Shown here in pieces: positions 411-30,309 of a stretch of DNA of 64,000 nt. Position 1 is the stretch's first letter, and each line of letters opens with the position of its first letter. The stretch lies in IMG/VR virus record IMGVR_UViG_3300025000_000053, positions 1 to 64,000 of that record; one strand, 5' to 3'. The notes beneath the pieces are model-generated. The model worked only from the letters and a program-made list of their open reading frames with translations, did not search any database and was not told the origin of the DNA. A program made the position numbers and the translations under genes.

Positions 411-475
411 AAAATATATGTGATTTATTCACATATATTTTTTTCGTATTTTTAACATTAATAGATATATATTAT
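411..475 (+). promoter_or_regulatory. Terminator hairpin + CGTA + early-type promoter TATATATTAT (466-475)
   Basis: AAAATATATGTGA/TCACATATATTTT hairpin, then CGTA at 445 and the core motif 21 nt later; same layout at four other sites. Confidence 0.7.
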
Positions 476-523
476 TTTAGTAATATGAATAAAATAATAT
501 AAATTATAAGGGGGGTTTTCATA

Positions 524-856
524 ATGAAAATAACATTTGATTATACCATGAAGGAAGCCAATTCTATTAACGGTTTAATAACAGAGGCAAATAATGTTGC
601 TAAACTGTTATCTGAAACAAAAGGCGATGTTATTGTTATACCGTTTGAAAACAGGCTTGCAACATTGAAAGTTGTCAAAGGTGAAAAAGCTGTGCTAGAT
701 ATTAATGAAGATTTCTTTATTGATTCTTTGTCGTATTTAACACATGTTTATAACCGAATTGTACCACTTGTTTTAGCTTATAAAAATCTTATACAAGATA
801 TATTCCCTGTTGCAAAAGATTATGTAAACAAATGGTTTCCAAAGAAAGATAAATAA
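524..856 (+). CDS. Hypothetical protein (early-type promoter)
   Basis: 110-aa ORF with G-rich RBS, promoter motif upstream and terminator downstream. Confidence 0.8.
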   Translation: MKITFDYTMKEANSINGLITEANNVAKLLSETKGDVIVIPFENRLATLKVVKGEKAVLDINEDFFIDSLSYLTHVYNRIVPLVLAYKNLIQDIFPVAKDYVNKWFPKKDK

Positions 857-887
857 ATTTTTATATATTTTTATTTAATTTTACCTA

Positions 888-923
888 AAAAAATAAAGGT
901 GTAATAATCCACCTTTATTTTTT
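888..923. terminator. Intrinsic terminator hairpin
   Basis: AAAAAATAAAGGTG / CACCTTTATTTTTT inverted repeat. Confidence 0.8.
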
Positions 924-938
924 GTGTGTTCCTTGCTT

Positions 939-950
939 AACACTATTATA
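939..950 (+). promoter_or_regulatory. Late-type promoter AACA-N6-TA
   Basis: AACACTATTATA; same motif precedes capsid, sheath, terminase and other genes. Confidence 0.6.
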
Positions 951-1460
951 CTAAATTTTTATTTTCATGAACCCGTTTCCTACTATAAAAAGAAATGGGG
1001 GTGATTAAAGAATTGATAATACAATTTATATAAATATAAAACATATTTATCATAGATATTGATAATATTTTTAACTCAAATAATTTATATCTTCTATCAG
1101 TAAAATAACATATAGAAGGGAGGGATGCCTATATACACATAACGATGTATATGGGATAACCTCTAATTATTTGCGAGTTTAAAAATATTATCTTTATATA
1201 ACTTTATTTAGAATTCGCCTACAAACTCCCCATAGACACTTGTGTATATAGGCAATCTATGATGGATGGGGACACTATCGGTTTAGAATATGATGAAGAA
1301 TAATATGCTACCTATTTGTTACAATGAATTTAGATAGTGTGAAAAAATACCTACTATTTTACAATTAAATATGTTCCGATATAAATAGTAGTAATGGTGA
1401 ATTTATTTTTATAAAATAAAAATAAAGCTCTGTGTAAATAATCCACAGAGCTTTATTTTT
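950..1460 (+). ncRNA. Candidate large structured non-coding RNA of unknown family
   Basis: No ORF >=60 aa; bounded by late promoter and terminator; nested stems 1061-1084/1166-1192, 1211-1219/1396-1404, 1272-1279/1333-1340, 1351-1359/1383-1391; perfect 14-bp pairing 1126-1139/1241-1254. Confidence 0.55.
1418..1460. terminator. Bidirectional intrinsic terminator
   Basis: AAAAATAAAGCTCTGTG / CACAGAGCTTTATTTTT. Confidence 0.85.
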
Positions 1461-1805
1461 TTATTTTTTTTCAATAACATCGGGTATAATTTCTGGTTTT
1501 AAATTTTTAATTTCTTTCTGTTCAGACTTAGTACTTTTATTACTTTGTATAGGAACATTTTGAATTACTACTGGTTTTGATTTAGGGATTTCTTCCTTTA
1601 TATCATTGTCTTTATCAAAATTACGAGCTGTTAATTTAATTTCAGTACCATCTTTAAGTACTTCAACAACATTAACACCTTTACTAATCATAGCAAAGAT
1701 AGTGGAAGTTTGTTCTGTATAAGGACTTAAGATTGGTCCATACACTCCACCCTTTGCCATAATAGGAGCTGTGCTAAGGATTTTAATATTTTTAGTTTTA
1801 ATCAT
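1461..1805 (-). CDS. Hypothetical protein
   Basis: 114-aa ORF with GGAGGG RBS. Confidence 0.8.
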   Translation of the reverse strand: MIKTKNIKILSTAPIMAKGGVYGPILSPYTEQTSTIFAMISKGVNVVEVLKDGTEIKLTARNFDKDNDIKEEIPKSKPVVIQNVPIQSNKSTKSEQKEIKNLKPEIIPDVIEKK

Positions 1806-1827
1806 TTGTTAAACCCTCCAATTTTAT

Positions 1828-2079
1828 TTAATAATTAGTATCCGGAATAAAATTTTCTTTAATATGCTTTAATTTTTCTTCCATATCCTGTTCTTCATCA
1901 AACTCAGGAATTCCGTCAACAAGTTTTTTAATTTCAGTACTTTCATCATCATCTATCAAGCCGGTATCATCCAAGATAGCATCACGAATATCATCATCGC
2001 CACTACTTTGGGCTACAGCTTCCATTAAAAACAGTTCTTGATTACTTTTACGAATATTTTTTTTAAGGTTAGATAACAA
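1828..2079 (-). CDS. Hypothetical acidic protein (start revised to TTG at 2079)
   Basis: GGGGGT RBS before TTG 2079; late motif at 2101-2112 (-); the longer ORF-track start overlaps the upstream gene. Confidence 0.65.
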   Translation of the reverse strand: MLSNLKKNIRKSNQELFLMEAVAQSSGDDDIRDAILDDTGLIDDDESTEIKKLVDGIPEFDEEQDMEEKLKHIKENFIPDTNY

Positions 2080-2122
2080 TATAATTACCCCCAATCTTTT
2101 TATTAAAATGTTTAAATGAAAA

Positions 2123-3313
2123 TTAGTTATTAGAAACAAATTTATTATAATAATATCGGAGAATAAATAATAACATAGGTATTTTAATATATGAATTAAA
2201 AGTATATTCCATATAATCATATTCTTCTAATTTTTCTAAATTTATATTATAAACTGAATCAATATGTTTATTAAAATAATCTACTAATAAATTTTCAATA
2301 ATAAAATCATCACTAAGTTTAACATCAGTCATTATACTATTTAAAACTTCTTCCTCAATATAATTATCACCACTATTAGTAAATGAAATAGAATTAACAT
2401 TATCCATATAATAAAGAAATATAGAATTATAATTTTGAATTATTGCATTGATATATTTAATACTTGTAGGTAAATTCTTTTTACCTCTTTCTAATAATCT
2501 ATAAATTGATTTCTCATATTCAATCACAAATGATAAACTATCATCTTCATTAACCAAACAAATTGTATTAAAATTATATTTTTCATTAAATAAGATATTA
2601 TTATTAATAAAATGATTTAAATATTTATCATAGAATTTATTACCAAATTCATTATTAAATATAAAGCAATTATATTTTTTATTGAAAAAAAATATTTTAT
2701 ACTTATCAGCTATATATCTATAAATTTCATTTAGTTTAAGTATTTTATAATAATCATCTTCTCGAATTAAACACTTTTCTTGTGTACCAATATTTCTTAA
2801 TACACAATTATATATTTCATTAATTTGATTTTCTAAATCCGTAACTAATTCTCCATAAGCTGATTTTAAAGTAAAAGAAATTTTATAATAATTATTACTC
2901 TTTATAGTATCATATTTAACTTCTGTTACCATAAATAAATAATTTTTATCTAAATATGAAATAGTAAAAAAATCATTTGGTAAAGGTTTAAGTGTATTAG
3001 GAAGAATAATAAGTTCACTATCAAAATTAGTTGTTAAACCCTCTTCTTCTTCACTTAATTCCAACATAATAGATTCTAAACCATATACAGGAAAGTCGTT
3101 TATCTTTTTAAACTTTAGTGGAGAATTTTCCCCTAATAAATCTTCAATATTTTCAAATCCACTATCAGTAATACTATTAATATTATCAATATTATAATAT
3201 GTAACAAATGTAGGATTTTTATCTAAAAATCTAGAATATTGAGAATTCATTCTTTCTTCATACTTAAAAATATTTTCATTAATAAAAGTTTTATCATCTA
3301 TTAAATATCCCAA
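2123..3313 (-). CDS. Probable virion structural protein
   Basis: 396-aa ORF, GAGGAG RBS, late motif at 3346-3357 (-). Confidence 0.55.
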   Translation of the reverse strand: MGYLIDDKTFINENIFKYEERMNSQYSRFLDKNPTFVTYYNIDNINSITDSGFENIEDLLGENSPLKFKKINDFPVYGLESIMLELSEEEEGLTTNFDSELIILPNTLKPLPNDFFTISYLDKNYLFMVTEVKYDTIKSNNYYKISFTLKSAYGELVTDLENQINEIYNCVLRNIGTQEKCLIREDDYYKILKLNEIYRYIADKYKIFFFNKKYNCFIFNNEFGNKFYDKYLNHFINNNILFNEKYNFNTICLVNEDDSLSFVIEYEKSIYRLLERGKKNLPTSIKYINAIIQNYNSIFLYYMDNVNSISFTNSGDNYIEEEVLNSIMTDVKLSDDFIIENLLVDYFNKHIDSVYNINLEKLEEYDYMEYTFNSYIKIPMLLFILRYYYNKFVSNN

Positions 3314-3493
3314 GATTTACTCAACTCCTCTCATATATTTTAAATTAATATAATGTTAAAAAATATAAAGAAAATGATTTTTTCGTATTTTTATTATATT
3401 TATTTATATATTATTTAAATATATTTAATAAAATAATCTTACTAATAAGGGTAAATAAAAATACTTATTAGATAGAAAGGATGAAAAAAATTA

Positions 3494-3910
3494 ATGGAAA
3501 CTTTAAATGATGTTTTATTACAGAATAGATGTGATTATTATAATGTATGCCTGGAACATGATTGTCCTTGTGCATTAGATAGTAAGGAATTCGATCCCGT
3601 ATTATATAATAAATTACAAGAAGATTATTATAATGATTTAAAATCTCTTGGTTTTATTAATAGTATTGATAGTAGTATTATAGATGAAGATTATTGTGAT
3701 GATGAAAATGATGATAGAGAAGAAGATAATTATATTGATTTTTATATAAGTAATAATGAAATAAAGGTAGGTGATTCTGTAGGATTTTATCCATATGATA
3801 GTTATGATATGATAGAAGGTAAAGTAATAGGAATAGTTGATAAAATTTTATTTATTGTTTGTTATAATGGGAGATTATATAAGGTTGATGAACTCGATAT
3901 TCTTAAATAA
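3494..3910 (+). CDS. Hypothetical protein with acidic linker and short beta-rich C-terminus
   Basis: 138-aa ORF, early cassette at 3384-3414. Confidence 0.75.
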   Translation: METLNDVLLQNRCDYYNVCLEHDCPCALDSKEFDPVLYNKLQEDYYNDLKSLGFINSIDSSIIDEDYCDDENDDREEDNYIDFYISNNEIKVGDSVGFYPYDSYDMIEGKVIGIVDKILFIVCYNGRLYKVDELDILK

Positions 3911-4002
3911 AAGAATGAGTATATTCTTTTATTTTTTTAGGAACATAGAAAAAAATAAATCAGTATAAAAATTTACTGATTTATTTTTAATAAATATAAA
4001 AT

Positions 4003-4266
4003 TTAAATATAAAGTTTTTCTTTATACTCATTTAACATATAAATAGCATTATCCCTCTTATCAGTATAAAGTTCTAACAATTCTTGAGGTGACAATAAAT
4101 CCCAATTATCTGTGTCAATAATAAATCTACCATTTTTGTGAAGACTTTGCAATTCTTCTGAAGTAAGAATTAATTTTAGTTTCATATGATGAAATAACAG
4201 TCCTTCTTTCTCAGCTTTCGCAAATAAAGGTTGGAACATTTTTAAAATTTTTTGTTCCTGAGTCAT
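4003..4266 (-). CDS. Hypothetical protein, paralog family A
   Basis: AEKEGLLF...GRFII..NWDLLSP motif shared with neighbours. Confidence 0.8.
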   Translation of the reverse strand: MTQEQKILKMFQPLFAKAEKEGLLFHHMKLKLILTSEELQSLHKNGRFIIDTDNWDLLSPQELLELYTDKRDNAIYMLNEYKEKLYI

Positions 4267-4283
4267 AAATAAATCACTCCAAA

Positions 4284-4568
4284 TTATTTTTTATAGGATT
4301 TTTGAATTCTTATTTTAAATGTTTCAAGCTGATTTTCAATATTCCTTTTCCTGCACTCTAACAACTTAACTTCTTCCATAGGATCCCTCAGTATCCAATT
4401 AGGTGGACCCCAAATAAATCGTCCTTCTATATGACATTTTCTTAATTCATCAGGAGTGAACCATGAACCCTCACGTTCCAAATAAAACCATAACCCTTTT
4501 TCATCAGCCTCTTTAAACATAGGCTCTAATGATTCTAAAATAGCATTAATATTTATTGAATTAAACAT
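4284..4568 (-). CDS. Hypothetical protein, paralog family A
   Basis: ADEKGLWF..WFTPDEL..GRFIW...NWILRDP. Confidence 0.8.
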   Translation of the reverse strand: MFNSININAILESLEPMFKEADEKGLWFYLEREGSWFTPDELRKCHIEGRFIWGPPNWILRDPMEEVKLLECRKRNIENQLETFKIRIQKSYKK

Positions 4569-4689
4569 TTTATCACCCCTAAAATTTTATTCTTATTGTA
4601 TTAATAATATATATTTAATTTTTTAACCTGGTCAATCAAAGATTTTGAAATTTCTTTTTTCTTATGTTACATTATTTTATAACCTCCAT

Positions 4690-4983
4690 TTATAAATCAA
4701 CCATTATTCGTTTATCAGAAGGATTATCAATTGAATCTCTAACATTACTAATTAATTCTTCAATTTTTATTTTCTTAGATTCCAATCTTTTAATCAATTT
4801 TTCAGGATGTTCAAGTCTCCAATTTCTAGATTTAATAAGTTTTCTTTTCATTAAAGACTTAAATTCAGGCACATTATACCAACAACCACTATTCATACCA
4901 AGGAACCATAATCCATTTTCTTCGGCATCTTTAATCATTTGATTTAATATTTCTTGATTTTTATCATTTATCATATTAAACAC
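4690..4983 (-). CDS. Hypothetical protein, paralog family A
   Basis: AEENGLWF..WYNVPEF...NWRLEHP. Confidence 0.8.
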   Translation of the reverse strand: MFNMINDKNQEILNQMIKDAEENGLWFLGMNSGCWYNVPEFKSLMKRKLIKSRNWRLEHPEKLIKRLESKKIKIEELISNVRDSIDNPSDKRIMVDL

Positions 4984-5027
4984 TCCTAAAATTTATTATT
5001 CATTACTTTAATAATATATATATATAT

Positions 5028-5585
5028 TTAATTTTTTATATAATTTTCAATTTTATTTATCTCTAATTGTATTATTTCTTTTTTTTCATATAAAGAGTTA
5101 AGAATATCGTTATGACCACGTAACTCCCATTTTGTTTTACACATAATATATTCAATATTGTTATAATAATCTATTATTCCATTAGGTGTGAACCAAATTT
5201 TTAAAAATTCATCATAAAGTAATAACTTTTCATTCCTAGCTTTATTAATTAAAGATTCCAATGTTTTAAGATAATTAATTATTTCATTTTTACTAGAAAT
5301 AGAAAAAGATTCATTCCTAGATAAAATATTTGTATAATCAAACAATCCCTCATTAACTAGTTTATCCAAATAATCCGACTGAATAAATTCTATATCTAAA
5401 GGTTTAAAATTTAAAAAACTTACATCTACGTTACCGTATTTATAAATACGGTAGTTATATTCCATTTTACAAGCAGCCCTATAAATTTTAATTAGTTTAG
5501 TTATATCAATATTCTTTTGACATAATTCAAAATACCAGTCCATTAATAATATTGCTTTATCATTATAAAAAGAATTAAAAAGCAT
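5028..5585 (-). CDS. Hypothetical protein with C-terminal family A domain
   Basis: ARNEKLLL..IWFTP...KWELRG. Confidence 0.75.
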   Translation of the reverse strand: MLFNSFYNDKAILLMDWYFELCQKNIDITKLIKIYRAACKMEYNYRIYKYGNVDVSFLNFKPLDIEFIQSDYLDKLVNEGLFDYTNILSRNESFSISSKNEIINYLKTLESLINKARNEKLLLYDEFLKIWFTPNGIIDYYNNIEYIMCKTKWELRGHNDILNSLYEKKEIIQLEINKIENYIKN

Positions 5586-5609
5586 GTATAAAAGACCCCC
5601 ATTATTTTT

Positions 5610-6191
5610 TTAATAAACTAATATATTCTTAACTTTATTCCAAATAAATACGAAATGTTCTAAAGCGAACTTATCGGCATATAATTCACTAACATCAAAA
5701 TTATGTGCTATACGTATAGGGTCATATTTATCAAGTTCTGATAATTTAAACATGATACATAAAGTATTTTTAATTATATTATCAAAATAAAAACTAGTGC
5801 TAATATCTTGATTATATTTATATAGTTCATTTAATTGAGCAATGTGACCATACTCATGTAATAAAAGCAAGAGAAAATTTGTTTCTGGGCTTAATTCTAA
5901 TCCAGTATTATATTTTAAAAAATTACCAAATCTTTCATTAGTTGATTTATAAAATTCAGGATATTGTTTATAAAAGCTTTCACAATCCTCATGTCTAATA
6001 TTTATTTCAGCAATAAATCTTTTTTTGTTTTTGTCCGAATAATTTTCATTAAATTCAACAAAAGCAAATTGATCTAAAAGGTCTTCTGGTACTGACTTAT
6101 ATTCCGATTCAATTAATTTAATCTTAACCTTACCATGTTTAAATTTAAATTCCTTTTTACAAAATTGAATACAATTTTCATAGAATGACAT
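5610..6191 (-). CDS. Putative zincin metallopeptidase (ImmA/IrrE-like motif layout)
   Basis: LLLLHEYGH and downstream ELYADKFA. Confidence 0.6.
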   Translation of the reverse strand: MSFYENCIQFCKKEFKFKHGKVKIKLIESEYKSVPEDLLDQFAFVEFNENYSDKNKKRFIAEINIRHEDCESFYKQYPEFYKSTNERFGNFLKYNTGLELSPETNFLLLLLHEYGHIAQLNELYKYNQDISTSFYFDNIIKNTLCIMFKLSELDKYDPIRIAHNFDVSELYADKFALEHFVFIWNKVKNILVY

Positions 6192-6439
6192 ATGCTATAA
6201 CCACCTTTTAATATTTTTTAATATAAAAATAACACCCTGGATACTCAACATAATGTATTTCAGTACCTGGTGTGGAGTCGTTATTAAGTGTATAACTAAC
6301 ACCATAATTACTACAACTTAATATATTTACAGCTATATATTCATCTTTTTACTAAATTTTTCATTATAAAATATTTCTTTACGACCCAATACTGCTTCAA
6401 CTAAATCCATAAATCTAGTTAATGGTGTATAATTTGGTT

Positions 6440-6736
6440 TCATTTAAAGTCACCCCAATTTAAAACTATATTTTTTATCACCTTAATAATATTATCAATT
6501 TTATTTTTTATTAAACCTTGTAACACTTCAAGTGTTGTTCGCACATCCCATTCATTGATATTAATTCTAGAACTTTGGTATAATATTTTAAATTCACTAG
6601 GACTAAGCCATTCATAACTTACAGTGTTATAAAATAAAAAACCTCCTGTCTTTTCCATATCTTCAACTAATTTATTTAAAGAATCTATTATTTCATAATT
6701 GAATATATGAGATTTATCAAAACCCTTGGATTTCAT
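6440..6736 (-). CDS. Hypothetical protein, divergent family A paralog
   Basis: MEKTGGFLF..EWLSPSEF...EWDVR. Confidence 0.7.
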   Translation of the reverse strand: MKSKGFDKSHIFNYEIIDSLNKLVEDMEKTGGFLFYNTVSYEWLSPSEFKILYQSSRININEWDVRTTLEVLQGLIKNKIDNIIKVIKNIVLNWGDFK

Positions 6737-7764: not shown

Positions 7765-7776
7765 ATAAAAAACCTC

Positions 7777-9315
7777 TTATAGTTGATTTAAGAAACTTAA
7801 GAATTCATCAGACACAACATCTTGGTTGATTTCAAGTTTTTCACCAAGTTTATCTAGATGATCATAATCAACAATAGTAAATGTTGAATTTAAAATAGTT
7901 GATAATAAATTTAAAATCAAATTAGATTTCTTTATTTCTTCAAGAGTTGAATATTTGTCTTGTATCAATGATTGATACAATGGTGTTTCTTCTAATTTAT
8001 TTAAAAATTTTGTGTTTTGAATAGTACGAGTATTTAAACGACCCTCAATATTTCCACTTATAATTTGCGGAAGATACAAACCACCCTGAATTTGTAATCT
8101 TCTCTTCAGCAATATAACAAGAATTATATATTGCTTTCTTGTTAACAAATTTAAATCTCTATATCCACCAAAATATTTGGCATAGAAATAATGAACCAAT
8201 TGTTTTTGAAATTTATTTTTCTTATGAAATTTCTTATAGAAAGTAATTTCATCTTTAGTAATCTTAACACCAATTTTTTTCTTAATTTTTTTAATTGTGC
8301 TTTTGATATTTACTTCAGATAATATTATCAATGATTCATCTATTTTATTAGAGTTCATTTCAAACTTATCTAAACCACTTAAACCATCTTCACCACTTTT
8401 ATCCGCACTTAATTCAACGAGATTAACTTTATAGTTTTTCTTAATAACAAAATAAAGTTGTTTCTCTAATATAAAAGAATTAAAATTAACAATGTTTTTA
8501 TTAAAAACATATTTAAACATAGTTTCAGTTATGATATTCTTTTTCAATAAACTGTTAAGATAAATTAATGGATCAACACCAAATATTTCTTGTTGTTCCC
8601 ACATTGGTTTATTGGAGGATAAATTCTTATTTATTTTAGCTGATACTGTCACCATTAATTTATTATAAATATTAATACCGTTACCATACAATTCAAATAA
8701 ACCTTTATAAAAAGTATAAATGTAATCAACATCTTTCTTAATGTTATTCACATTAATATATTGAAATACTACTGGAATCATTATTTTAATAGACATCGAA
8801 ATCATCATCATTATCTTGGCATGTTCATTCGTTATCTCTAATGACTCACTATACTTCTTTTTATCATTACTAGTCAAATCAATATAATAATTATCTTCAA
8901 CCATTTTGATAATCTTTTCTTTCATACTATCAGTAAATAATATACCATATAAAAGTTTAATAAAAGTTTTAGGTTTTTTAACAGGTTTAGTTTTATCATC
9001 AATAAAATATTTGAGTTTAAAGTATGACATTAATAATTCATTATTAGTATCATAAAATTTAATAAAATAATTCAAATAATGAATTATACCTTTTTCATTC
9101 TTAATTATACCATTTTCATTTTTTTTATTGGTATTATTAAGTTGATTAACATATGATTCTTTCTTAATAATAAAAACATTCAATGTACTGGCACTATCTT
9201 TTTTAAATATTTTATCAAATGGGATTATTATTAATTTCCCATCACACTTGATGATATTATCTTCTTCTTCGGGCTCCCATTCATCTACTCTTATTAAGTC
9301 GGTAACACAATCCAT
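7777..9315 (-). CDS. Non-virion RNAP promoter-specificity (sigma-like) subunit, AR9 gp226-like
   Basis: Blocks IPFDKIFKKD..NVFIIKKESY, IYNKL, LSGLDKFEMN..DESLIILSEVNIKSTIKKIKKK resemble AR9 gp226 as recalled; two genes from GroEL as in AR9 (gp226/gp228); early motifs upstream. Confidence 0.75.
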   Translation of the reverse strand: MDCVTDLIRVDEWEPEEEDNIIKCDGKLIIIPFDKIFKKDSASTLNVFIIKKESYVNQLNNTNKKNENGIIKNEKGIIHYLNYFIKFYDTNNELLMSYFKLKYFIDDKTKPVKKPKTFIKLLYGILFTDSMKEKIIKMVEDNYYIDLTSNDKKKYSESLEITNEHAKIMMMISMSIKIMIPVVFQYINVNNIKKDVDYIYTFYKGLFELYGNGINIYNKLMVTVSAKINKNLSSNKPMWEQQEIFGVDPLIYLNSLLKKNIITETMFKYVFNKNIVNFNSFILEKQLYFVIKKNYKVNLVELSADKSGEDGLSGLDKFEMNSNKIDESLIILSEVNIKSTIKKIKKKIGVKITKDEITFYKKFHKKNKFQKQLVHYFYAKYFGGYRDLNLLTRKQYIILVILLKRRLQIQGGLYLPQIISGNIEGRLNTRTIQNTKFLNKLEETPLYQSLIQDKYSTLEEIKKSNLILNLLSTILNSTFTIVDYDHLDKLGEKLEINQDVVSDEFLSFLNQL

Positions 9316-9432
9316 TATTAATATCCCACCCCCTAAAAAATACTCTCCGCTTCTGATATGTATTCTCTATTTCTATATTAATATAATATATAATTCATTT
9401 TATCTTATAATATATAGTTTAGGATGGGATAT

Positions 9433-10206: not shown

Positions 10207-10292
10207 AAGATAATACCCCCTAAGTTAGTAATTTATAAAATCTTATCTAGGAATGGTTGCTATTAACAACCATTCCTTTAATACTTATATTT

Positions 10293-16657: not shown

Positions 16658-16667
16658 TATATATTAT
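16658..16667 (+). promoter_or_regulatory. Early-type promoter TATATATTAT upstream of nvRNAP beta-prime (representative of ~14 sites)
   Basis: Same 10-mer upstream of accessory genes and the sigma-like gene, on the coding strand. Confidence 0.65.
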
Positions 16668-20344: not shown

Positions 20345-20345
20345 T

Positions 20346-21380: not shown

Positions 21381-21532
21381 AATAATTATGTATTAATAAA
21401 TCATAGTTTTAGTAGTATATAATTTATACTATAAACTATGATTTATTTTTTATAAAGAATTTAAATATATATTATATTGGTATAAGTTTTTATTATATAT
21501 AATAAAATATTTAAATTTTAGGGGGTATAAAA

Positions 21533-21790
21533 ATGGTAGGTAGAGGAACTGTGGGAGCTTTAAATAATTTAGTAAATGAATTTTGTGAAGTGTCTGAAGA
21601 CAAGTATAAAATAGTTAAGTTAAAAGAAAATATTAAATTCACTAGCAATTTTAAAGGAACAATTGAAGATTTAAAAAATGGTTTATTATATTTATTTGAA
21701 AAAAGCCATTCTGGTGATTGTCTTTGTCTATTGAATGATAGTCATTTAGTACTTGTTGATAGAAGAGATGTTTTAGATATAGTTTGTTAG
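21533..21790 (+). CDS. Hypothetical protein
   Basis: 85-aa ORF, early motif at 21466. Confidence 0.7.
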   Translation: MVGRGTVGALNNLVNEFCEVSEDKYKIVKLKENIKFTSNFKGTIEDLKNGLLYLFEKSHSGDCLCLLNDSHLVLVDRRDVLDIVC

Positions 21791-21827
21791 ATATATAATT
21801 TTATTGGGAGATGGAGGATGTAACTAA

Positions 21828-23786: not shown

Positions 23787-23809
23787 AAATAAAGGAGTGT
23801 GATAATAAT

Positions 23810-24826
23810 ATGAATTTATCCTCTATAATAGTATACAATCAACAAATACAACTGAATGCCCGAAAATTTAATATTCAGGCAGGTGAAGACATTTTTCCAA
23901 TAATGTCTAAATCTCAATGGAAAGAACACTTAACTAATCTATTAAATGGTGCAAGAAATTTATCAGAAATTATAGATTTAAGTATTCTTCAGATTCCTCA
24001 ATTAGATTCAGAATTAATTGAGATAATAAAAGAATTTAATCCTGATTTTATTACAGTTGACAATAATATTCTACATATAGAATATGGTAAAGAAGATGAT
24101 AAATACTATTGTCGAACTAATGTTGACGAAAATTTTGCACGTAATACTATATTAGATAATATAGTATTACCTGGAGGTCGTATTGTTGAAATTTATTGTA
24201 ATAATATTTCAGCCAATAATTTTATAAATTTAGTAGAAAAAATCGAGGGTGAACGAATAAAAAGACGTTTATCTCAGATTTCAACTAAATATGAAAAATG
24301 GACATCTAAATTAGACAATGTGTTGGAATGGATACCAGAAATTGGTTCCAAAGTTGAAATTACACGTAAGGATAATGGAAAGGGTGAACCAATCAACGGT
24401 TTTATAACATTGAAAATGGAACACAATGGGTGGACAAAATTTATTACAGAAGATGATAGATATAAAGTGATTGTTGATACCCAAAGTATTATTGAACAAA
24501 TAATGAAATTATTTGTTGACGAGATTTTTACAATAAATAGAGAAGACCCATGGTACAAAAATGAAGGAAGCTTTTTTTCAAATTGGCGATTAACTGAATT
24601 GGGTCAACGATTGCTAGATAAATTTAATGAACTTGCTAATGTTGACTATATTGAAAACTTATCTATTAATAATATAATAGATAGGATTAATAATATTAAA
24701 GGTCTTATATCATCTACTAAAAATGAAATTGAATTTGGTGGAAAGGATAAAGCAATAAAAAATCTTAATAATTCTATAGAATTATTAAGAGATTCTTTTA
24801 ATGCAAGTAAATGTTATAAAAAATAA
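23810..24826 (+). CDS. Hypothetical protein, possibly the separated C-terminal part of the helicase
   Basis: 338-aa ORF directly downstream with own RBS. Confidence 0.65.
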   Translation: MNLSSIIVYNQQIQLNARKFNIQAGEDIFPIMSKSQWKEHLTNLLNGARNLSEIIDLSILQIPQLDSELIEIIKEFNPDFITVDNNILHIEYGKEDDKYYCRTNVDENFARNTILDNIVLPGGRIVEIYCNNISANNFINLVEKIEGERIKRRLSQISTKYEKWTSKLDNVLEWIPEIGSKVEITRKDNGKGEPINGFITLKMEHNGWTKFITEDDRYKVIVDTQSIIEQIMKLFVDEIFTINREDPWYKNEGSFFSNWRLTELGQRLLDKFNELANVDYIENLSINNIIDRINNIKGLISSTKNEIEFGGKDKAIKNLNNSIELLRDSFNASKCYKK

Positions 24827-24845
24827 AAAAAGGGGCTGTTTTATA

Positions 24846-25280
24846 ATGTTATCCCATCAAGTTGCATCAGTTTTTATCATTAATGATAAAAATGAAATTC
24901 TATTAATTAATCACAAAAAACTTATTGTTTGGCTTCCACCAGGCGGTCATGTTGAACATGAAAAAAATGAATTAATTCATCATGCTGCAATTAGAGAAGT
25001 GATGGAAGAGACTGGTGTTCATTTTAAGTTTATAAGTGGTGGGAAAGGTGATATGAATAAAGTATTAGGTTCATTACCTTTACCCTCATTTATTCAACTA
25101 GAAGATTTAGGCGATCATTATCATGAAGACTTTATTTATGTTGGACTATTTGTTTCAAATGATATACCTAAAGAAGCTACAGAAATTAAATGGTTTAACA
25201 AAGAAAGTATTAATTCAATTAATACTTTTGAACATGTTAAAAGACATCTTCAAATAATTTGTAATAGATATTTTATTTAA
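24846..25280 (+). CDS. Nudix hydrolase
   Basis: PGGHVE...AAIREVMEETG Nudix box; ATG 24846 after AGGGG. Confidence 0.88.
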   Translation: MLSHQVASVFIINDKNEILLINHKKLIVWLPPGGHVEHEKNELIHHAAIREVMEETGVHFKFISGGKGDMNKVLGSLPLPSFIQLEDLGDHYHEDFIYVGLFVSNDIPKEATEIKWFNKESINSINTFEHVKRHLQIICNRYFI

Positions 25281-25431
25281 TAAAAATAAAGGAGAGAAAA
25301 TCTCCTTTATTTTTTTCGTATGTTTGTACTATTCATTTATATATTATATTAACATAATAGGATATAATACACACTAAAAATATATATTAAATATATCTTA
25401 TTAAAAAATAAAAAGAGGGGGAATTTTTTGT

Positions 25432-26184
25432 ATGAGTAGAAAGTTATTGGTTAGTATTATTATCTGTTGTTTATTATGTATTTGTGGAGGTGCTTTTGCT
25501 AATCAACCAATAATTAAGATTGATCTTATTACTAGGGACTTTTCATCAACCCCCCTAGTAAATGAAAATGGTACTTTATTAGCTCCAGCTAAACCTATTG
25601 CTGAAGCATTTAGGGGGACTGTTAAAGGTACTGTTAATACTTGCTATGTGTATATAAATCGTGGTAATAAATGTGTTGTTTTGAATCCTACTAATATAGG
25701 GGAATATTATCTTCAAGAGGGTAAGTATGTTAAAAGTAAAGATACCTCAATTGCAGGACAAGTAATAAATGGAAATTTATATATACCTATAAGAGCTTAT
25801 GTTGAAGCTCTTGAAGGTAGAGTTCTATGGGATGGAACTAAAAATACTGTAATGGTTTATACTGATTCTGCTGATGTTAACTATTTTTTAAGTAAGCAAA
25901 AATTAGAACCATCCTCTAATCAAAATTCAGAATCTTCTAATGTAAGTGTATCAGAAAATTCACTAGATAGAAATGGTAATGAAATCCAAATAGGAGATAT
26001 TGTTTCATCTGGTGGATTTTATGGAAATGTGCAGCAAATAAATGGTAGTAGAATATTAGTTTATTGGGATAGTAAATCAGAATTCATTCCCGATAAAGAT
26101 ATTACTTTCTGGGCATCCATAAATGGAATTAGATATAAATCCAGTAATTGGGTTGATTCTAGTGGTGTATTAATAGAAAGATAA
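25432..26184 (+). CDS. Secreted protein with copper-amine-oxidase N-terminal (stalk)-like domain
   Basis: Signal peptide ending AFA; NGTLLAPAKPIAEAF and NGNLYIPIRAYVEALEGRVLWD repeats. Confidence 0.75.
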   Translation: MSRKLLVSIIICCLLCICGGAFANQPIIKIDLITRDFSSTPLVNENGTLLAPAKPIAEAFRGTVKGTVNTCYVYINRGNKCVVLNPTNIGEYYLQEGKYVKSKDTSIAGQVINGNLYIPIRAYVEALEGRVLWDGTKNTVMVYTDSADVNYFLSKQKLEPSSNQNSESSNVSVSENSLDRNGNEIQIGDIVSSGGFYGNVQQINGSRILVYWDSKSEFIPDKDITFWASINGIRYKSSNWVDSSGVLIER

Positions 26185-26347
26185 ATTTTTATTAATAAAA
26201 GAACTTTTAATTAAGTTCTTTTATTTTTTTAGTATTATTATATATTTTAAATATATATTATTTCATTGAATAAAATATTATTCCCACAATAAGGGGAAAT
26301 AAATATACTTATTGTATATATCTAAGATGATATATTTAGGAGGTGTA

Positions 26348-26425
26348 ATGAATTTTATCTCATCATTCTCAATTTCGTTAATTTGTTTCTGTGTTCCATA
26401 TATGTTTTTTAAACTTATATTTTAA
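26348..26425 (+). CDS. Small hydrophobic peptide (25 aa)
   Basis: AGGAGGTG RBS then MNFISSFSISLICFCVPYMFFKLIF*; downstream of early cassette at 26231-26261. Confidence 0.45.
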   Translation: MNFISSFSISLICFCVPYMFFKLIF

Positions 26426-26437
26426 GGGGGTATTAAA

Positions 26438-26878
26438 ATGAGTTCAATGAATACTCATCAATATGTAATTATAACTTTACCAAGTTCTATTTATGATTCT
26501 AGTAGGGAAGTGGCATCTTTATCATTAAAGAATTATATTTTTCAGTTTTGTCAAAAGCATGGAATTACTCCAGCTAAATTTCCTGTAGATATTTATAGCA
26601 CATATAACAAATGTCCAGAATATTACTGTGATGGTAGTAACCCATTTGAAATTATTGATGCTAATTTCGATGGAATAAAGTTAATTTCCAAAAAGGAAAA
26701 AGTTGAATTAGCTGTAGCCATTGAAACAAATTTACCATGTGAGAATATTGTTAGACTTTTTGAACTAAAAATTATTCAAGGGTTTTCAGTTCATGTTTTC
26801 GGCTCAATATTCCGTCATGATAACATATCGGGTTTATTAGCAAAGTTGTTCAAGATAATCAATGAAAAAAAGAAATAA
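26438..26878 (+). CDS. Hypothetical protein
   Basis: 146-aa ORF with RBS. Confidence 0.7.
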   Translation: MSSMNTHQYVIITLPSSIYDSSREVASLSLKNYIFQFCQKHGITPAKFPVDIYSTYNKCPEYYCDGSNPFEIIDANFDGIKLISKKEKVELAVAIETNLPCENIVRLFELKIIQGFSVHVFGSIFRHDNISGLLAKLFKIINEKKK

Positions 26879-27017
26879 AATTTTGTTCTTTGCCATTATC
26901 CAACACTAATAAAAAAGTGTTGGATACATGAAAAGAATTATAACGCTTGCAAGTGCGAAAATACTTGCATCGTCATTGTAATTAAAAAATATTACTTTGA
27001 CGTAAAAAGGAGGAAAA

Positions 27018-27545
27018 ATGAAAAATAATAGTTTTAAGAAATTAACAGAGCAAGAAAAGAAAGCAATGTTACTTGCTGTTATTGCCAAAAGAACTGAAGG
27101 TAAGTTAAGTAAAAGTCAGTTGGAATATATGGTTAGAGATATTCCAACAGATGTGCAATATAGCATTAAAGTAATAACTGATGCTAAAGAATTTGCAAAG
27201 GCTATTACTTTACCTGACTATGAAATGAAACATTCATGGGCAGGAGAAACAAAATGTAATGCTGAAACTAATATTTTATTAATTTCAGGTATAAAATTTG
27301 GTAGAACAAAACATTATCAATACCTTGATAATGGTAGTTTAACTAGTGAAGAAAAATGGAACTCTTTACCAGATTTTGATGTGAATGAAATTCATGCAGT
27401 TGCAGTTAGTATTCGGTCTTTTAGTGATTATAACAATGAACACTACAACAATACTGATAATTTCATTTATATTTATATACCTTCTAACATGGCCTTTATT
27501 GTGTCAAAAGAAGTTCAATATATTCTTGATAATTTCTCTATTTAG
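27018..27545 (+). CDS. Hypothetical protein
   Basis: 175-aa ORF with AGGAGG RBS. Confidence 0.75.
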   Translation: MKNNSFKKLTEQEKKAMLLAVIAKRTEGKLSKSQLEYMVRDIPTDVQYSIKVITDAKEFAKAITLPDYEMKHSWAGETKCNAETNILLISGIKFGRTKHYQYLDNGSLTSEEKWNSLPDFDVNEIHAVAVSIRSFSDYNNEHYNNTDNFIYIYIPSNMAFIVSKEVQYILDNFSI

Positions 27546-27610
27546 TTTTCATCGGTTTGGTGTTATCCGTTAAACACTAAATAAAAATTTTAATAAAATG
27601 AGGTGATGAT

Positions 27611-27784
27611 GTGATTAAAAGAATGACATGTGATGACTGTGGTAATACATTTTCAACTAATACAGAAAATGTAAATGACCAAGGTATGGTTCTTGATGTT
27701 CAGTGTAAATGTGGTAGTTGGGAAGTTAATATAGCCAAAGATGAAAAAGTTGAACAAATACTTCCTAAACATTTAAGGAAATAA
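27611..27784 (+). CDS. Small zinc-ribbon protein (57 aa)
   Basis: Below ORF-track cutoff; GAGGTG RBS; CDDC...CKCG. Confidence 0.65.
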   Translation: MIKRMTCDDCGNTFSTNTENVNDQGMVLDVQCKCGSWEVNIAKDEKVEQILPKHLRK

Positions 27785-27845
27785 TCAGATTTAATTAATA
27801 AGAGAACTTTTTAATAAGGTTCTCTTATTTTTTTTATACTAGGAG

Positions 27846-29294
27846 GTGTACTATATGAATATTATTAAGGCTAAACATACTTCAATTATTATTCCTAATT
27901 ATAATTTAGGTGATAATTTAACATTGGAACATAGTTTATCAGTTTGGAATGATAGTTATTATAGATATGATAATAAAGGCTTTTATTATAATAAAAGCAC
28001 TAAAGAATTATTATTACCAAGAGGTTTAGATTTAGGTTATTTAGAAAAAGTTTTTAATTTAAATATAGATATTGATTTTAAACCTGATCCATATGAAACA
28101 GTTTCATACAGATTAAAGGTAGAACCAAGAAATGATATACAAAGAAAATCTATTTGTTTTTTAATTGGAGAAGATGATTTTTCATATACTAAAAAATATT
28201 CTCAGTTAGCTTTAAATTTAGGTACTGGGGATGGAAAAACGTATACTGTTATAGCATCACTTTCATTTATAAGAACAAAAGCTATTATATTTACTCATGT
28301 TAATGAGTTAAAGAAACAATGGATAAAAGAGATTAAAAAATTTACTGATGTAATAGACTCTCAAATATGTAATATTAGTGGTGGAGCTACTATAAAAAAA
28401 ATATTAAAATCCGATAAGCTACCTTATAAAATTTATCTTGTTAATCATAGAACCATTAATAATTATGGTGAAACACATGGTTGGGATAAAGTGACTGAAT
28501 TATTTCAAAAGATTAAAGTTGGGGTTAAAGTTTATGATGAAGCCCATTTTGAATTTGATAATATAATAAAAACTGATTTACATACTAATACTAAAAAAAC
28601 TATTTATTTAACAGCTAATTTTGAGAGATCTGATTTTAAAGAAAATAAATTATTTAATTTATGTTTTAAGAATATTGCTAAGTATGGTGTTGAAACAAGA
28701 CATGAAAAAAGAAAGCATATTGTATATTTAGGTTTATTATTCAATAGTAAACCTGATATAGTTAACCAAGCTTCTATAAAGAAAAGACATGGATTTGATA
28801 AAAATACTTATATTGATTATCAAATAAAAAAAGGAAAGATATTTGATGTATTATTTTATATAATGTATTATTTTCATGATAAAGAAGGTAAGATGCTAGT
28901 ATTATCTTCTAAAATAGAATCTACTGAAGTAATAGCAAAATATTTAAAAGAAGAATTTCCTGAAAAAACTGTAGGTGTTTTTAATTCTACTATAAGTGAA
29001 AGTGATAAAATTAAAGCATTACAATGTGATATAATAAGTTCAACTCCTAAAAGTTTAGGAACTGGGTTAGATATACCTGATTTAAGATTTATTATTATGA
29101 CAGAACCATATAGTTCATCTATAACAGCTAACCAAACATCTGGTAGATTAAGAGAATTATCTCCAGAAATATATACTTTTTTTATTGAGTTGGTTGATAC
29201 TGGATTTAATAAAGTTCATAGTATGTATAAATCTAGAATGAAAATATTTAAACAAAAATGTGCTAAATTGGTTCAATTAAAATACACTGAATAA
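27846..29294 (+). CDS. Superfamily 2 DNA helicase (UvsW-like)
   Basis: GTGDGKT, YDEAH, LTA, GLDIPDL, QTSGRLR. Confidence 0.87.
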   Translation: MYYMNIIKAKHTSIIIPNYNLGDNLTLEHSLSVWNDSYYRYDNKGFYYNKSTKELLLPRGLDLGYLEKVFNLNIDIDFKPDPYETVSYRLKVEPRNDIQRKSICFLIGEDDFSYTKKYSQLALNLGTGDGKTYTVIASLSFIRTKAIIFTHVNELKKQWIKEIKKFTDVIDSQICNISGGATIKKILKSDKLPYKIYLVNHRTINNYGETHGWDKVTELFQKIKVGVKVYDEAHFEFDNIIKTDLHTNTKKTIYLTANFERSDFKENKLFNLCFKNIAKYGVETRHEKRKHIVYLGLLFNSKPDIVNQASIKKRHGFDKNTYIDYQIKKGKIFDVLFYIMYYFHDKEGKMLVLSSKIESTEVIAKYLKEEFPEKTVGVFNSTISESDKIKALQCDIISSTPKSLGTGLDIPDLRFIIMTEPYSSSITANQTSGRLRELSPEIYTFFIELVDTGFNKVHSMYKSRMKIFKQKCAKLVQLKYTE

Positions 29295-29343
29295 AATAAA
29301 TATATATTATTAAGTAGAATAAAAAATAAAGGGGTAGATAAAT

Positions 29344-29550
29344 GTGATTAATATTAAGAAAATTGAAGTATTAATGTATGAGATGACAATTACAGCAGAT
29401 GACATGTGTGAACTTTGGGAGATTATGAATACAATAAATAGAGGGGATTCAATAGGTACTGGTGTTATTAAGAGTGCTGAAAAATTTTTTAATAAACTTG
29501 AGGATATTAGACCCGGTGGTGGCTTTGAACAAAGAAAATATGTAAAGTAA
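29344..29550 (+). CDS. Hypothetical protein
   Basis: 68-aa ORF, early motif at 29301. Confidence 0.6.
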   Translation: MINIKKIEVLMYEMTITADDMCELWEIMNTINRGDSIGTGVIKSAEKFFNKLEDIRPGGGFEQRKYVK

Positions 29551-29599
29551 TAATTATATATGTCATAATATTTAATAAAAAATAGGAGGTTTATTATAA

Positions 29600-30181
29600 A
29601 TGAAACAATATCTTGTAACCTGCGGTATAATACCACAATCAGGTGAATGTAAATTTGGAGAAAAATGTACTCCTAAAATGTGCCCAAATTTTATACACAA
29701 TTTATCAGATAAACAAAAAATTATTGAGATTATTAAACATCATGTTATATTTAGTGATGATGAACTATTTGAGGAACACCGATTTGTTGGTAAAGCTGCA
29801 AATGGTAAGTATTTTTATTTATGGGGAGAAAAATATCTTACTGATGGTTTAATACCAGTAATAAATCTTGGAAATACAGATAGTGGTATTATGTATTTTA
29901 ATACTAAGGATGATGTTATCGAAGCATTTAATATTGTCCTTGAAATAATTGAATTTTCACAAAAAGAACTTCTTGGTAAAATATGTTTTAATAAACATTC
30001 GATTAGTCATAAAGCTGTAATAATAAATAGTAGTATTTGTTATTTAGATGAAGAAACAAATGAAATAAAGGTAATAGATAATAAGTTAAATTCTTTACTC
30101 TTTTGTACCATTAATAATTTATATTATGAAAATTATTTAAATCTATTTATGAAACTTAAATATGATGACTTGTTACCATAA
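29600..30181 (+). CDS. Hypothetical protein with N-terminal Cys cluster
   Basis: AGGAGG RBS; four Cys in first 30 aa. Confidence 0.7.
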   Translation: MKQYLVTCGIIPQSGECKFGEKCTPKMCPNFIHNLSDKQKIIEIIKHHVIFSDDELFEEHRFVGKAANGKYFYLWGEKYLTDGLIPVINLGNTDSGIMYFNTKDDVIEAFNIVLEIIEFSQKELLGKICFNKHSISHKAVIINSSICYLDEETNEIKVIDNKLNSLLFCTINNLYYENYLNLFMKLKYDDLLP

Positions 30182-30309
30182 ATATATAAAATAATAAGTG
30201 ATGATTATATAATCATCACTTATTATTTTTTTAGTATTTTTAACATAATACTTTATATATTATAAATACATATATAGAAAAGATTTAGTTGTATTGGAGG
30301 TGAGATTAG

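What the first reader, a model, noticed from the sequence alone, without database searches (positions are those of the whole stretch)
411..30263. Fixed-spacing terminator-promoter cassette in front of accessory genes
Seen: at five loci a T-tract (the tail of a terminator hairpin in at least four) runs into (C/A)GTAT, and TATATATTAT starts exactly 21 nt after the C/A: 445/466, 3384/3405, 25317/25338, 26231/26252, 30233/30254. Other copies of the core (e.g. 16658, 21466, 29301) lack it. Inference: an upstream element of the virion-RNAP early promoter, or a mobile regulatory cassette like the PeSL elements of T4-type phages that shuffles accessory genes.
Basis: partly seen in the sequence, partly recalled or inferred. 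Interest (0 to 1): 0.6.

Follow-up and report, generated by a model that had tools for sequence, protein, structure and literature searches.

The report
Two-part early promoter of jumbo phage
About a quarter of this giant phage's early promoters carry a second short signal (T-C/A-GTAT) exactly 16 bases upstream of the known core; related phages keep the same signal, and in the studied phage AR9 it marks the genes whose transcripts peak first after infection.

Summary
All five window sites read T(C/A)GTAT-N16-TATATATTAT. The whole 250-kb phage record has 14 such sites among 52 intergenic cores, where about 0.05 are expected by chance.

The core equals the published early promoter of Bacillus phage AR9, which is read by the RNA polymerase carried in the virion. 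The phage is a distant AR9 relative from groundwater.

The upstream GTAT element is not in the AR9 papers I could search. It is conserved:
- A roughly 85%-identical relative keeps GTAT at 43 of 44 positions, while spacers keep 134 of 176.
- Three other metagenomic jumbo phages, AR9 and BpSp carry it at N16 or N17, and the spacing is fixed within each genome.

In published AR9 RNA-seq data, the 10 promoters with the element include all 6 that drive the eight "pre-early" genes. Their median 5-min/20-min ratio is 1.16, against 0.21 for the rest (p=1.6e-5).

The T-tract is mostly the tail of the upstream gene's terminator, packed against the promoter's edge.

Best reading: a -35-like element that defines an immediate-early subclass. 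The PeSL-like mobile-cassette idea is only partly supported. Early promoters of both classes sit at synteny breaks more often than other intergenic regions, and one crossover falls in TAGTAT. No transcription start site data exist for this phage.

The parts
410..444 (+). Terminator hairpin plus T7 tail of the upstream co-directional reading frame. The tail abuts the upstream element.
   Evidence: RNA fold -13.8 kcal/mol, z -6.0
444..475 (+). Bipartite early promoter 1: TCGTAT-N16-TATATATTAT. Predicted start at A482. Drives a 110-aa ORFan (524-856).
   Evidence: The allele at 228780-228811 and the G001 orthologue keep TCGTAT. No family hit for the ORF.
3383..3414 (+). Bipartite early promoter 2: TCGTAT-N16-core. 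It has a T6 run but no hairpin, and the upstream gene is divergent. Drives a 138-aa ORFan (3494-3910) that is absent at this place in relative G001.
25282..25316 (+). Terminator hairpin plus T7 tail after gene 24801-25280
   Evidence: -15.6 kcal/mol, z -4.5
25316..25347 (+). Bipartite early promoter 3: TCGTAT-N16-core. Drives a 250-aa protein (25432-26184) with a hydrophobic, signal-peptide-like N-terminus (read by eye) and a Cu_amine_oxidN1 domain.
   Evidence: The orthologue in G001 keeps TCGTAT while the spacer differs at 4 of 16 positions.
26194..26230 (+). Terminator hairpin plus T7 tail after gene 25432-26184
   Evidence: -12.1 kcal/mol, z -6.0
26230..26261 (+). Bipartite early promoter 4: TAGTAT-N16-core. 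Heads a unit of four genes (26438-29294) that ends with a helicase.
26268..26315 (+). Conserved 5' leader with a possible hairpin (loop GGGGAAATAAATATA). It is shared with the promoters at 3405, 98491(-) and 99329(-).
   Evidence: 88.5% of cells paired; covariation weak
30188..30232 (+). Terminator hairpin (19 pairs) plus T7 tail after gene 29600-30181
   Evidence: -20 kcal/mol, z -9.6. Also found by the terminator scan.
30232..30263 (+). Bipartite early promoter 5: TAGTAT-N16-core. Drives an 88-aa ORFan (30310-30576), followed by its own terminator at 30582-30617.
   Evidence: Conserved in G001 and G002.
16658..16667 (+). Example of a core-only early promoter without the upstream element. Others in the window are 21466 and 29301 on the + strand, and 4613, 5020, 9392, 9416, 58588 and 63364 on the - strand.

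Best explanation
**What the window is.** It is the first 64 kb of an AR9-like jumbo phage from groundwater. Its early genes are preceded by the same core that phage AR9's virion RNA polymerase (vRNAP) uses, TATATATTAT-N6-purine(+1).

**What the finding is.** A subclass of these promoters is bipartite. It has a second, -35-like element, T(C/A)GTAT, at -38..-33 from the predicted start. This lies exactly 16 bp upstream of the core, or 17 bp in the AR9 lineage.

**Proposed mechanism (inferred).**
- The element is contacted by the vRNAP complex itself, or by a factor delivered with it.
- It puts these promoters in an immediate-early ('pre-early') temporal class. That class drives small, fast-evolving ORFans, probably host-takeover genes.

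**The T-tract.** It is the U-tail of the intrinsic terminator of the preceding gene. Tight packing pushes terminators against the upstream edge of whichever promoter follows. That edge is -22 for bipartite promoters and -3 for core-only ones. This produces the 'fixed-spacing terminator-promoter cassette'.

**A by-product.** The repeated roughly 36-bp promoter sequences can act as short homology patches for insertion or deletion of promoter-plus-ORFan units.

**Shown here:** the motif, its spacing, its conservation, the terminator hairpins, and the AR9 kinetic correlation.

**Inferred:** who binds the element, the start site in this phage, and the temporal class in this phage.
For: 1. **The core matches AR9.** It equals the AR9 early consensus, whose starts were mapped 7 nt after the core (PMC5312081). 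Here, every one of 52 promoters has a purine at that position.
2. **Phage type.**
   - It encodes beta-like and beta'-like RNAP pieces.
   - It has an AR9-type major head protein at 27% identity.
   - It has no sigma-70 r2 or r4 domain.
   - Sigma-70-type promoter matches are not enriched: 92 found against 100 expected.
3. **Spacing.** 14 of 52 promoters have TMGTAT at one exact offset, P about 1e-30.
4. **Not simple duplication.** The 14 downstream proteins are unrelated to each other, except the allelic pair 524-856 and 228859-229182.
5. **Purifying selection.** In 11 orthologous promoter pairs with relative G001:
   - GTAT is identical at 43 of 44 positions.
   - The spacer is identical at 134 of 176.
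   - The core is identical at 110 of 110.
   - No pair has an indel in the spacer (p=0.0005 for GTAT against spacer).
6. **Breadth.**
   - G001 has 10 of 42 cores with GTAT at N16.
   - G005 has 13 at N16.
   - G004 has 8 at N17.
   - G006 has 3 at N17.
   - AR9 has 10 at N17.
   - BpSp has 8 at N17.
   - Reversed-pattern controls gave 0-1 for the AR9, G001 and metagenomic scans. For BpSp the looser 8-mer pattern gave 5 control matches, but its 8 sites share one exact spacing.
7. **Function in AR9.**
   - All eight published pre-early genes lie in operons driven by 6 of the 10 CGTAT promoters, and none by the other 28 (Fisher p=7.6e-5).
   - The median first-gene 5'/20' FPKM ratio is 1.16 against 0.21 (Mann-Whitney p=1.6e-5).
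   - Data; tests.
8. **Terminator abutment.** T-runs end at -21 in 9 of 14 bipartite promoters, 7 of them after hairpins. They end at -3 in 9 of 38 core-only promoters. G005 shows the same hairpin-then-element layout.
Against: - **No RNA data for this phage.** Only DNA runs from groundwater hold the sequence. The start site and temporal class here are extrapolated from AR9.
- **The AR9 link is a correlation.**
   - It comes from one published RNA-seq time course.
   - A repressor operator, or differences in mRNA stability, could give the same kinetics.
- **No binding protein is identified.** vRNAPs of this group have no known sigma-like subunit.
- **Not universal.** Staphylococcus (MarsHill, SA1) and Listeria (LPJP1) relatives show no clear signal.
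- **Gene calls are heuristic.** I made them with a simple script.
Confidence: 0.6

Rival explanations
1. Operator for a shut-off factor. TMGTAT is the binding site of an early phage-encoded repressor. The repressor switches these promoters off within minutes and so produces the pre-early profile. The element does not help the polymerase.
For: AR9 element-bearing transcripts stay flat or fall between 5 and 20 min, while other early transcripts rise about fivefold. That fits active shut-off as well as it fits early firing. AR9-like phages encode many small DNA-binding and zinc-finger proteins (annotation tables).
Against: - The element is a short, asymmetric 5-6-mer in one orientation. Its distance to the core is fixed to the base pair within each genome and shifted by exactly 1 bp between lineages. 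That is typical of polymerase or activator contact elements, such as -35 hexamers and T4 MotA boxes (my own knowledge). Operators tolerate variable placement and are usually dyads.
- No dyad symmetry is shared among the 14 sites.
Confidence: 0.2
2. A PeSL-like mobile or recombinogenic cassette. On this reading, the composite terminator-element-core unit is conserved mainly because it travels with ORFans or mediates their shuffling by recombination. The GTAT element has no role of its own in transcription.
For: - G001 carries an extra promoter plus 177-aa gene between two TAGTAT-core cassettes. G000 has one hybrid cassette with the crossover at TAGTAT.
- The unit at 3383-3910 is absent from G001 and from the record's second end copy.
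- Early promoters coincide with G000/G001 homology breaks in 19 of 38 cases, against 26 of 101 for promoterless intergenic regions (p=0.008).
- Four cassettes share about 95 nt, including a leader hairpin, in front of unrelated ORFans.
Against: - Break frequency does not differ between bipartite (7/12) and core-only (12/26) promoters (p=0.73).
- Spacers between GTAT and the core are unrelated among most copies within a genome. So most copies are not recent duplicates.
- The element is kept at orthologous sites while the flanks diverge. In AR9 it correlates with expression timing, which a pure recombination role does not predict.
- The promoter is not sigma-70-like.
Confidence: 0.12
3. Part of the terminator rather than the promoter. 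On this reading, the T-tract plus MGTAT is a termination or pause signal for the polymerase that transcribes the upstream gene.
For: In 9 of 14 sites the element follows a T5-7 run directly, and in 7 a strong hairpin precedes the run.
Against: - TTTTT[CA]GTAT occurs 25 times, but only the 9 copies followed by the core at +21 lie in this context.
- Five sites have the element with no T-tract.
- Site 3384 and several AR9 sites (g120, g169) face a divergent upstream gene, where nothing needs terminating.
- AR9 elements are preceded by A-rich sequence, not T-rich.
- Terminators in front of core-only promoters lack it.
Confidence: 0.03

Closest known systems
AR9 (Takahashivirus) early promoters read by the virion multisubunit RNA polymerase: AAATATATATTAT-N6-G(+1) (Lavysh et al. 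2017, PMC5312081)
   Same: - The 10-nt core is identical.
- There is an A three bases before the core and a purine 7 nt after it.
- The sites lie in front of early-type genes.
- The phage has split beta and beta' RNAP genes and an AR9-type head protein.
- AR9 itself carries the upstream CGTAT element in 10 of its roughly 40 early promoters.
   Different: - The published consensus covers only the core. The searchable AR9 paper and the jumbo-phage RNAP review do not mention an upstream element.
- Here the spacing is N16 and the consensus is T(C/A)GTAT. In AR9 it is N17 and (C/A)CGTAT(T/C)AAA.
- This phage is only about 27% identical to AR9 in the head protein, and its host is unknown.
PeSL (promoter-early stem-loop) cassettes of T4-like phages (Arbiol et al. 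2010, PMC2839356; Comeau et al. 2014, PMC4122927)
   Same: - It is a composite of a terminator stem-loop and an early promoter in short intergenic spaces.
- It sits in front of ORFans.
- At least one insertion/deletion between close relatives has its crossover inside the cassette.
   Different: - PeSL promoters are strong sigma-70 promoters read by the host polymerase. These are vRNAP-type.
- Association with synteny breaks is not specific to the bipartite class.
- Mini-circles were not tested.
T4 middle promoters: a -10 element plus a MotA box at a fixed distance (my own knowledge, cited as an analogy only)
   Same: A fixed-distance upstream box is added to a shared downstream element, and it defines a temporal promoter class.
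   Different: The T4 system works through host sigma-70 with AsiA and MotA. No such factors, and no sigma, are detectable here. The timing is the earliest class, not a middle one.

Membership tests
AR9-type vRNAP early promoter | Highly conserved AT-rich core TATATATTAT, preceded by A-rich bases | tested here: met
   57 exact cores in the genome. Among the 52 intergenic promoters, 49 have an A at position -3. Published consensus.
AR9-type vRNAP early promoter | Transcription start 7 nt after the core (a G in AR9) | tested here: inconclusive
   All 52 sites have a purine at that position (38 A, 14 G). No RNA data exist for this phage.
AR9-type vRNAP early promoter | Lies upstream of, and co-oriented with, genes of a phage that encodes two split multisubunit RNAPs | tested here: met
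   52 of 57 cores are intergenic and within 250 nt of a co-directional gene. RNAP beta-like and beta'-like genes were found at 7777-9315, 174457-177408, 179350-180057, 82847-82966 and 134971-135782. Which set is packed in the virion was not tested.
AR9-type vRNAP early promoter | Transcribed early, without new protein synthesis and without the host RNAP | not testable with these tools
   This needs infection experiments, and no host or isolate is known.
PeSL cassettes of T4-like phages | Strong sigma-70-like early promoter (-35 and -10 boxes) read by the host RNAP | tested here: not met
   TMGTAT does not resemble TTGACA. Relative to the expected start it lies 3 bp too far upstream. Sigma-70-type matches are not enriched (92 found against 100 expected).
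PeSL cassettes of T4-like phages | A stem-loop that acts as a terminator forms part of the conserved cassette | tested here: met
   Four of the 5 window sites and 7 of the 14 genome sites have a hairpin plus T-run ending at the element. The same layout occurs in G005. The hairpin sequences themselves are not conserved between copies.
PeSL cassettes of T4-like phages | Cassettes flank ORFans and mark indel or replacement ends between close relatives | tested here: inconclusive
   The downstream genes are ORFans. There is one clear crossover in TAGTAT. Breaks are enriched at early promoters in general, but no more so at bipartite ones.
PeSL cassettes of T4-like phages | Recombination between cassettes gives mini-circles | not testable with these tools
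   This needs inverse PCR or read-level junction analysis from infected cells.

The most novel reading that the evidence does not exclude
AR9-like jumbo phages have a conserved, previously undescribed -35-like promoter element, (T/C)(C/A)GTAT, placed 16 or 17 bp upstream of the core. It is read by the sigma-less virion RNA polymerase or by a co-injected factor, and it defines an immediate-early regulon of fast-evolving host-takeover ORFans. This would be the first sequence determinant that explains AR9's 'pre-early' class. It would also be the first hint that promoter recognition by a virion multisubunit RNAP is bipartite.
Probability: 0.5. Interest if true: 0.75.

Novelty: new variant of a known kind. 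Interest (0 to 1): 0.62.

Why it matters
How the virion-packaged multisubunit RNA polymerases of jumbo phages find promoters without a sigma factor is an open question. Published work describes only a roughly 10-nt core near -10.

A second element with base-pair-exact spacing implies a second DNA-contact surface, or a factor. That surface or factor could be looked for in virion proteomes and in vRNAP structures.

- **Explanatory value.** The element gives a sequence-level explanation for the AR9 'pre-early' class, which the authors left unexplained.
- **Predictive value.** It allows the very first genes expressed, which are candidate host-takeover and anti-defence functions, to be predicted from sequence alone in uncultured jumbo phages such as this groundwater one.
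- **Testability.** The claim can be tested directly in AR9 and Bacillus subtilis with promoter mutants.
- **Genome evolution.** The terminator-promoter-ORFan units also show how accessory genes may be swapped in this group.

Tried and rejected
- **Host sigma-A promoter reading.** Rejected. The hexamers do not fit, sigma-70-type matches are not enriched, and the phage has no sigma domains.
- **Gene-family duplication as the source of the motif.** Rejected. Only one pair of downstream proteins is related, and that pair is allelic.
- **Cores with one mismatch.** 351 sites, almost all noise. Only 29 are intergenic near a gene, and none carries the element. I therefore used exact cores only.
- **Nucleotide search of isolate phages.** No match.
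- **IMG/VR-wide scan for CGTAT-N10-24-core.**
   - It did lead to three further jumbo phages.
- **Staphylococcus phages MarsHill and SA1, and Listeria phage LPJP1.** No clear fixed-spacing signal.
- **Homology between genes behind element-bearing promoters.**
   - AR9 against BpSp: none apart from one weak match of AR9 g049 (annotated LysM peptidoglycan-binding).
   - AR9 against this phage: none apart from the homing-endonuclease protein g190.
- **Overlap with an AR9-type late promoter (AACA-N6-TA/G) in the spacers that contain AACA.** The downstream T-purine is missing, so I rejected this by eye.
- **RNA evidence.** Only DNA runs hold the sequence.
- **Rfam.** No hit in the window or at 132-152 kb. 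No tRNAs in the window.
- **Leader hairpin.** RNAalifold preferred a different 5-bp stem, and covariation for my 8-bp stem is weak.

Full report
**1. What the window is**

The window is the first 64 kb of a 249,853-bp IMG/VR virus record with 24.5% G+C. The same sequence is held only by DNA runs of a groundwater metagenome.

The record encodes:
- RNA polymerase pieces of the split multisubunit type;
- a GroEL, topoisomerase II, ligase, sheath and head proteins.

Its major head protein is 25-27% identical to those of Bacillus phages AR9, PBS1 and BpSp, and of the Staphylococcus jumbo phages. It has no nucleotide-level relative among isolate phages. It is therefore a distant, uncultured member of the AR9-like jumbo phages.

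**2. Check of the observation**

- All five sites read T(C/A)GTAT-N16-TATATATTAT at the stated coordinates.
- None of 100 shuffles of the window gave a single match to this pattern.
- Four of the five T-tracts are tails of strong hairpins, z -4.5 to -9.6. The fifth, at 3384, faces a divergent gene and has no hairpin.
- Genome-wide there are 57 exact cores. Of these, 52 are intergenic and within 250 nt of a co-directional start codon.
- [CA]GTAT lies exactly 21 nt before the core start in 14 of them. No other offset occurs more than twice. The T at -22 is invariant.
- From the intergenic frequency of TMGTAT, about 0.05 are expected, P about 1e-30.
- In the reverse direction, 9 of the 25 genomic TTTTT[CA]GTAT are followed by the exact core. 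The other 16 have 3-8 mismatches to the core at +21 and no evident hairpin.
- The record's first 21.2 kb and last 21.6 kb are collinear copies at 82-89% identity. The sites at 466 and 228802 are therefore probably two alleles, which leaves 13 independent loci.

**3. What the core is**

AR9 early promoters were mapped by dRNA-seq. They read AAATATATATTAT-N6-G(+1), and they are used by the virion RNA polymerase without new protein synthesis (PMC5312081).

The core here is identical. An A lies three bases before it in 49 of 52 promoters, and a purine lies 7 nt after it in all 52.

With that start site, TMGTAT lies at -38..-33.

Sigma-70-type promoters are not enriched, and the phage has no sigma-70 domains.

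**4. Is the upstream element functional or inherited?**

The 14 downstream proteins are unrelated to each other, apart from the allelic pair. The 16-nt spacers are mostly unrelated.

A relative at about 85% nucleotide identity, G001 (187 kb), has orthologues of 11 sites. Identity by segment is:

| Segment | Identical positions |
|---|---|
| GTAT | 43 of 44 |
| TMGTAT | 63 of 66 |
| Spacer | 134 of 176 |
| Core | 110 of 110 |
| Upstream flank | 150 of 253 |

No pair has an indel in the spacer. GTAT against the spacer gives p=0.0005.

The element also recurs in other genomes, always at a spacing fixed within the genome:

| Genome | Sites with GTAT at the fixed spacing |
|---|---|
| G001 (187 kb) | 10 of 42 cores at N16 |
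| G005 (292 kb) | 13 at N16 |
| G004 (265 kb) | 8 at N17 |
| G006 (145-kb fragment) | 3 at N17 |
| Bacillus pumilus phage BpSp | 8 at N17 |
| AR9 | 10 of about 40 at N17, CGTAT |

Reversed-pattern controls gave 0-1 for those, for G001 and for AR9.
- The BpSp scan used a looser 8-mer pattern whose control gave 5 matches, but its 8 sites share one exact spacing.
- One of the AR9 sites spans the record's ends.
- MarsHill, SA1 and LPJP1 gave no clear signal.

**5. What it does: evidence from AR9**

Lavysh et al. listed eight 'pre-early' genes whose transcripts peak at 5 min: g048, g109, g111, g120, g169, g235, g289 and g292. They left the cause open.

- Mapping the element onto their Table S2 and the GenBank annotation shows that all eight lie in operons driven by element-bearing promoters: P048, P108, P120, P169, P234 and P292.
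- That is 6 of the 10 element-bearing promoters and 0 of the 28 others (Fisher p=7.6e-5).
- With their Table S4 FPKM values, the first gene behind element-bearing promoters has a median 5-min/20-min ratio of 1.16, against 0.21 for the rest. Mann-Whitney p=1.6e-5.
- I found no mention of the element in that paper, in the 2020 review of jumbo-phage RNAPs, or in full-text searches. The 2016 AR9 genome paper is not in the library, so I cannot exclude a mention there.

**6. The T-tract and the 'cassette'**

- In bipartite promoters, T-runs end immediately before the C/A in 9 of 14 cases. Seven of these follow hairpins.
- In core-only promoters, the commonest end of a T-run is 3 nt before the core, in 9 of 38 cases.
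- AR9 elements are preceded by A-rich sequence, not T-rich.
- In G005, GC-richer hairpins abut the element, but their tails are not pure T-runs.

I conclude that the T-tract belongs to the terminator of the preceding gene. The exact abutment reflects tight packing of terminators against the promoter's upstream edge. That packing itself shows that the functional promoter extends to -22 in this class.

**7. The mobile-cassette idea**

The genes behind the 14 promoters are small. Their median length is 114 aa and none exceeds 250 aa, against a median of 190 aa for core-only promoters. The ten scanned have no informative PHROG or Pfam match, except one Cu_amine_oxidN1 domain and one weak hit to a PHROG of unknown function. 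The last three, and the allele at 228859-229182, were not scanned.

I compared G000 with G001:
- Homology breaks coincide with 7 of 12 bipartite promoters, 12 of 26 core-only promoters and 26 of 101 promoterless intergenic regions.
- Promoters against the rest gives p=0.008. Bipartite against core-only gives p=0.73.
- At 112266, G001 has an extra promoter plus a 177-aa gene between two TAGTAT-core cassettes. G000 has one hybrid cassette whose upstream side matches the first and whose spacer matches the second. The crossover is therefore at TAGTAT.
- The unit at 3383-3910 is missing from G001 and from the record's other end copy.

This resembles PeSL-mediated shuffling in T4-like phages (PMC2839356, PMC4122927). 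It is a property of early promoters in general, however, and the promoter type differs. I treat it as an analogy, not as membership.

**8. Mechanism and its rivals**

The element has a strict orientation. Its spacing is exact to the base pair within a genome and shifts by 1 bp between lineages. It lacks dyad symmetry. These features favour a contact element for the polymerase complex or for a co-delivered activator.

An operator for an early repressor would also explain the flat or falling AR9 kinetics, and I cannot exclude it by computation.

A terminator-only role is contradicted by three things: sites without T-tracts, sites facing divergent genes, and AR9.

My confidence breaks down as follows:
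- about 0.8 that this is a functional, conserved promoter-linked element marking a subclass;
- 0.6 for the specific reading given as the best explanation;
- about 0.45 for direct contact by the virion RNAP complex.

**9. Limits**

- There is no transcript evidence for this phage.
- Gene calls come from a simple script.
- The AR9 link rests on one published data set.
- The synteny-break classification depends on blastn in AT-rich DNA.

Noticed in passing
window 1-21181 and G000 228254-249853: The two ends of the record are direct, collinear copies at 82-89% identity, and the record ends exactly where the similarity ends. The likely cause is an assembly that runs more than once round a roughly 228-kb circularly permuted or terminally redundant genome and joins two co-occurring strains. 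Essential genes (RNAP piece, GroEL, DNA polymerase) therefore appear twice.
   Followed up: partly
window 40549-40918 and 48209-48559; G000 73030-73403, 82965-83278, 84995-85722, 92086-92393, 135123-135499, 177776-178137, 227133-227470, 228189-228489, 242527-242864: A repeat of about 350 bp occurs in at least 12 copies here and in many copies in relative G001. One copy splits the beta'-like reading frames at 134971-135782, and another abuts a 63-aa beta-like exon at 82847-82966. It looks like an intron family, as in the AR9 RNAP genes. Rfam gave no hit.
   Followed up: partly
window 3421-3470 and 26268-26315; G000 98475-98425(-) and 99313-99260(-): Four bipartite promoters share a conserved leader of about 50 nt in front of unrelated ORFans. 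It has a possible 8-bp hairpin whose 14-nt loop, GGGGAAATAAATATA, contains a Shine-Dalgarno-like run. Three orthologues exist in G001. It could be a 5' stabiliser or a protein-binding site. Covariation support is weak: 88.5% of cells are paired, but only one pair shows a compensatory change.
   Followed up: partly
window 25432-26184: An early-promoter-driven 250-aa protein has a hydrophobic, signal-peptide-like N-terminus (read by eye) and a Cu_amine_oxidN1 domain (E 2e-11).
   Followed up: no
window 9383-9416 (- strand): Two exact cores lie in tandem, 24 nt apart, upstream of the RNA polymerase gene at 7777-9315. AR9 also has a few genes with two shifted early promoters.
   Followed up: no
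window 63355-63364(-) and G000 64133-64142(-): Two core-only promoters about 780 bp apart have nearly identical 35-nt upstream regions (TTTTTTATTATTTCAACAACAAAAT.ATATATGAA). This points to a local duplication of a promoter region.
   Followed up: no
AR9 record KU878088, ends (251030-251042 joined to 1-30): The promoter of g292 has its CCGTAT element only when the linear record's two ends are joined. The same bases, read on the other strand, lie upstream of the divergent g001 promoter.
   Followed up: yes
G000 promoters, position 7 nt after the core: G rather than A at the predicted start is commoner in bipartite promoters (7 of 14) than in core-only ones (7 of 38), p=0.035. AR9 starts are almost all G.
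   Followed up: no
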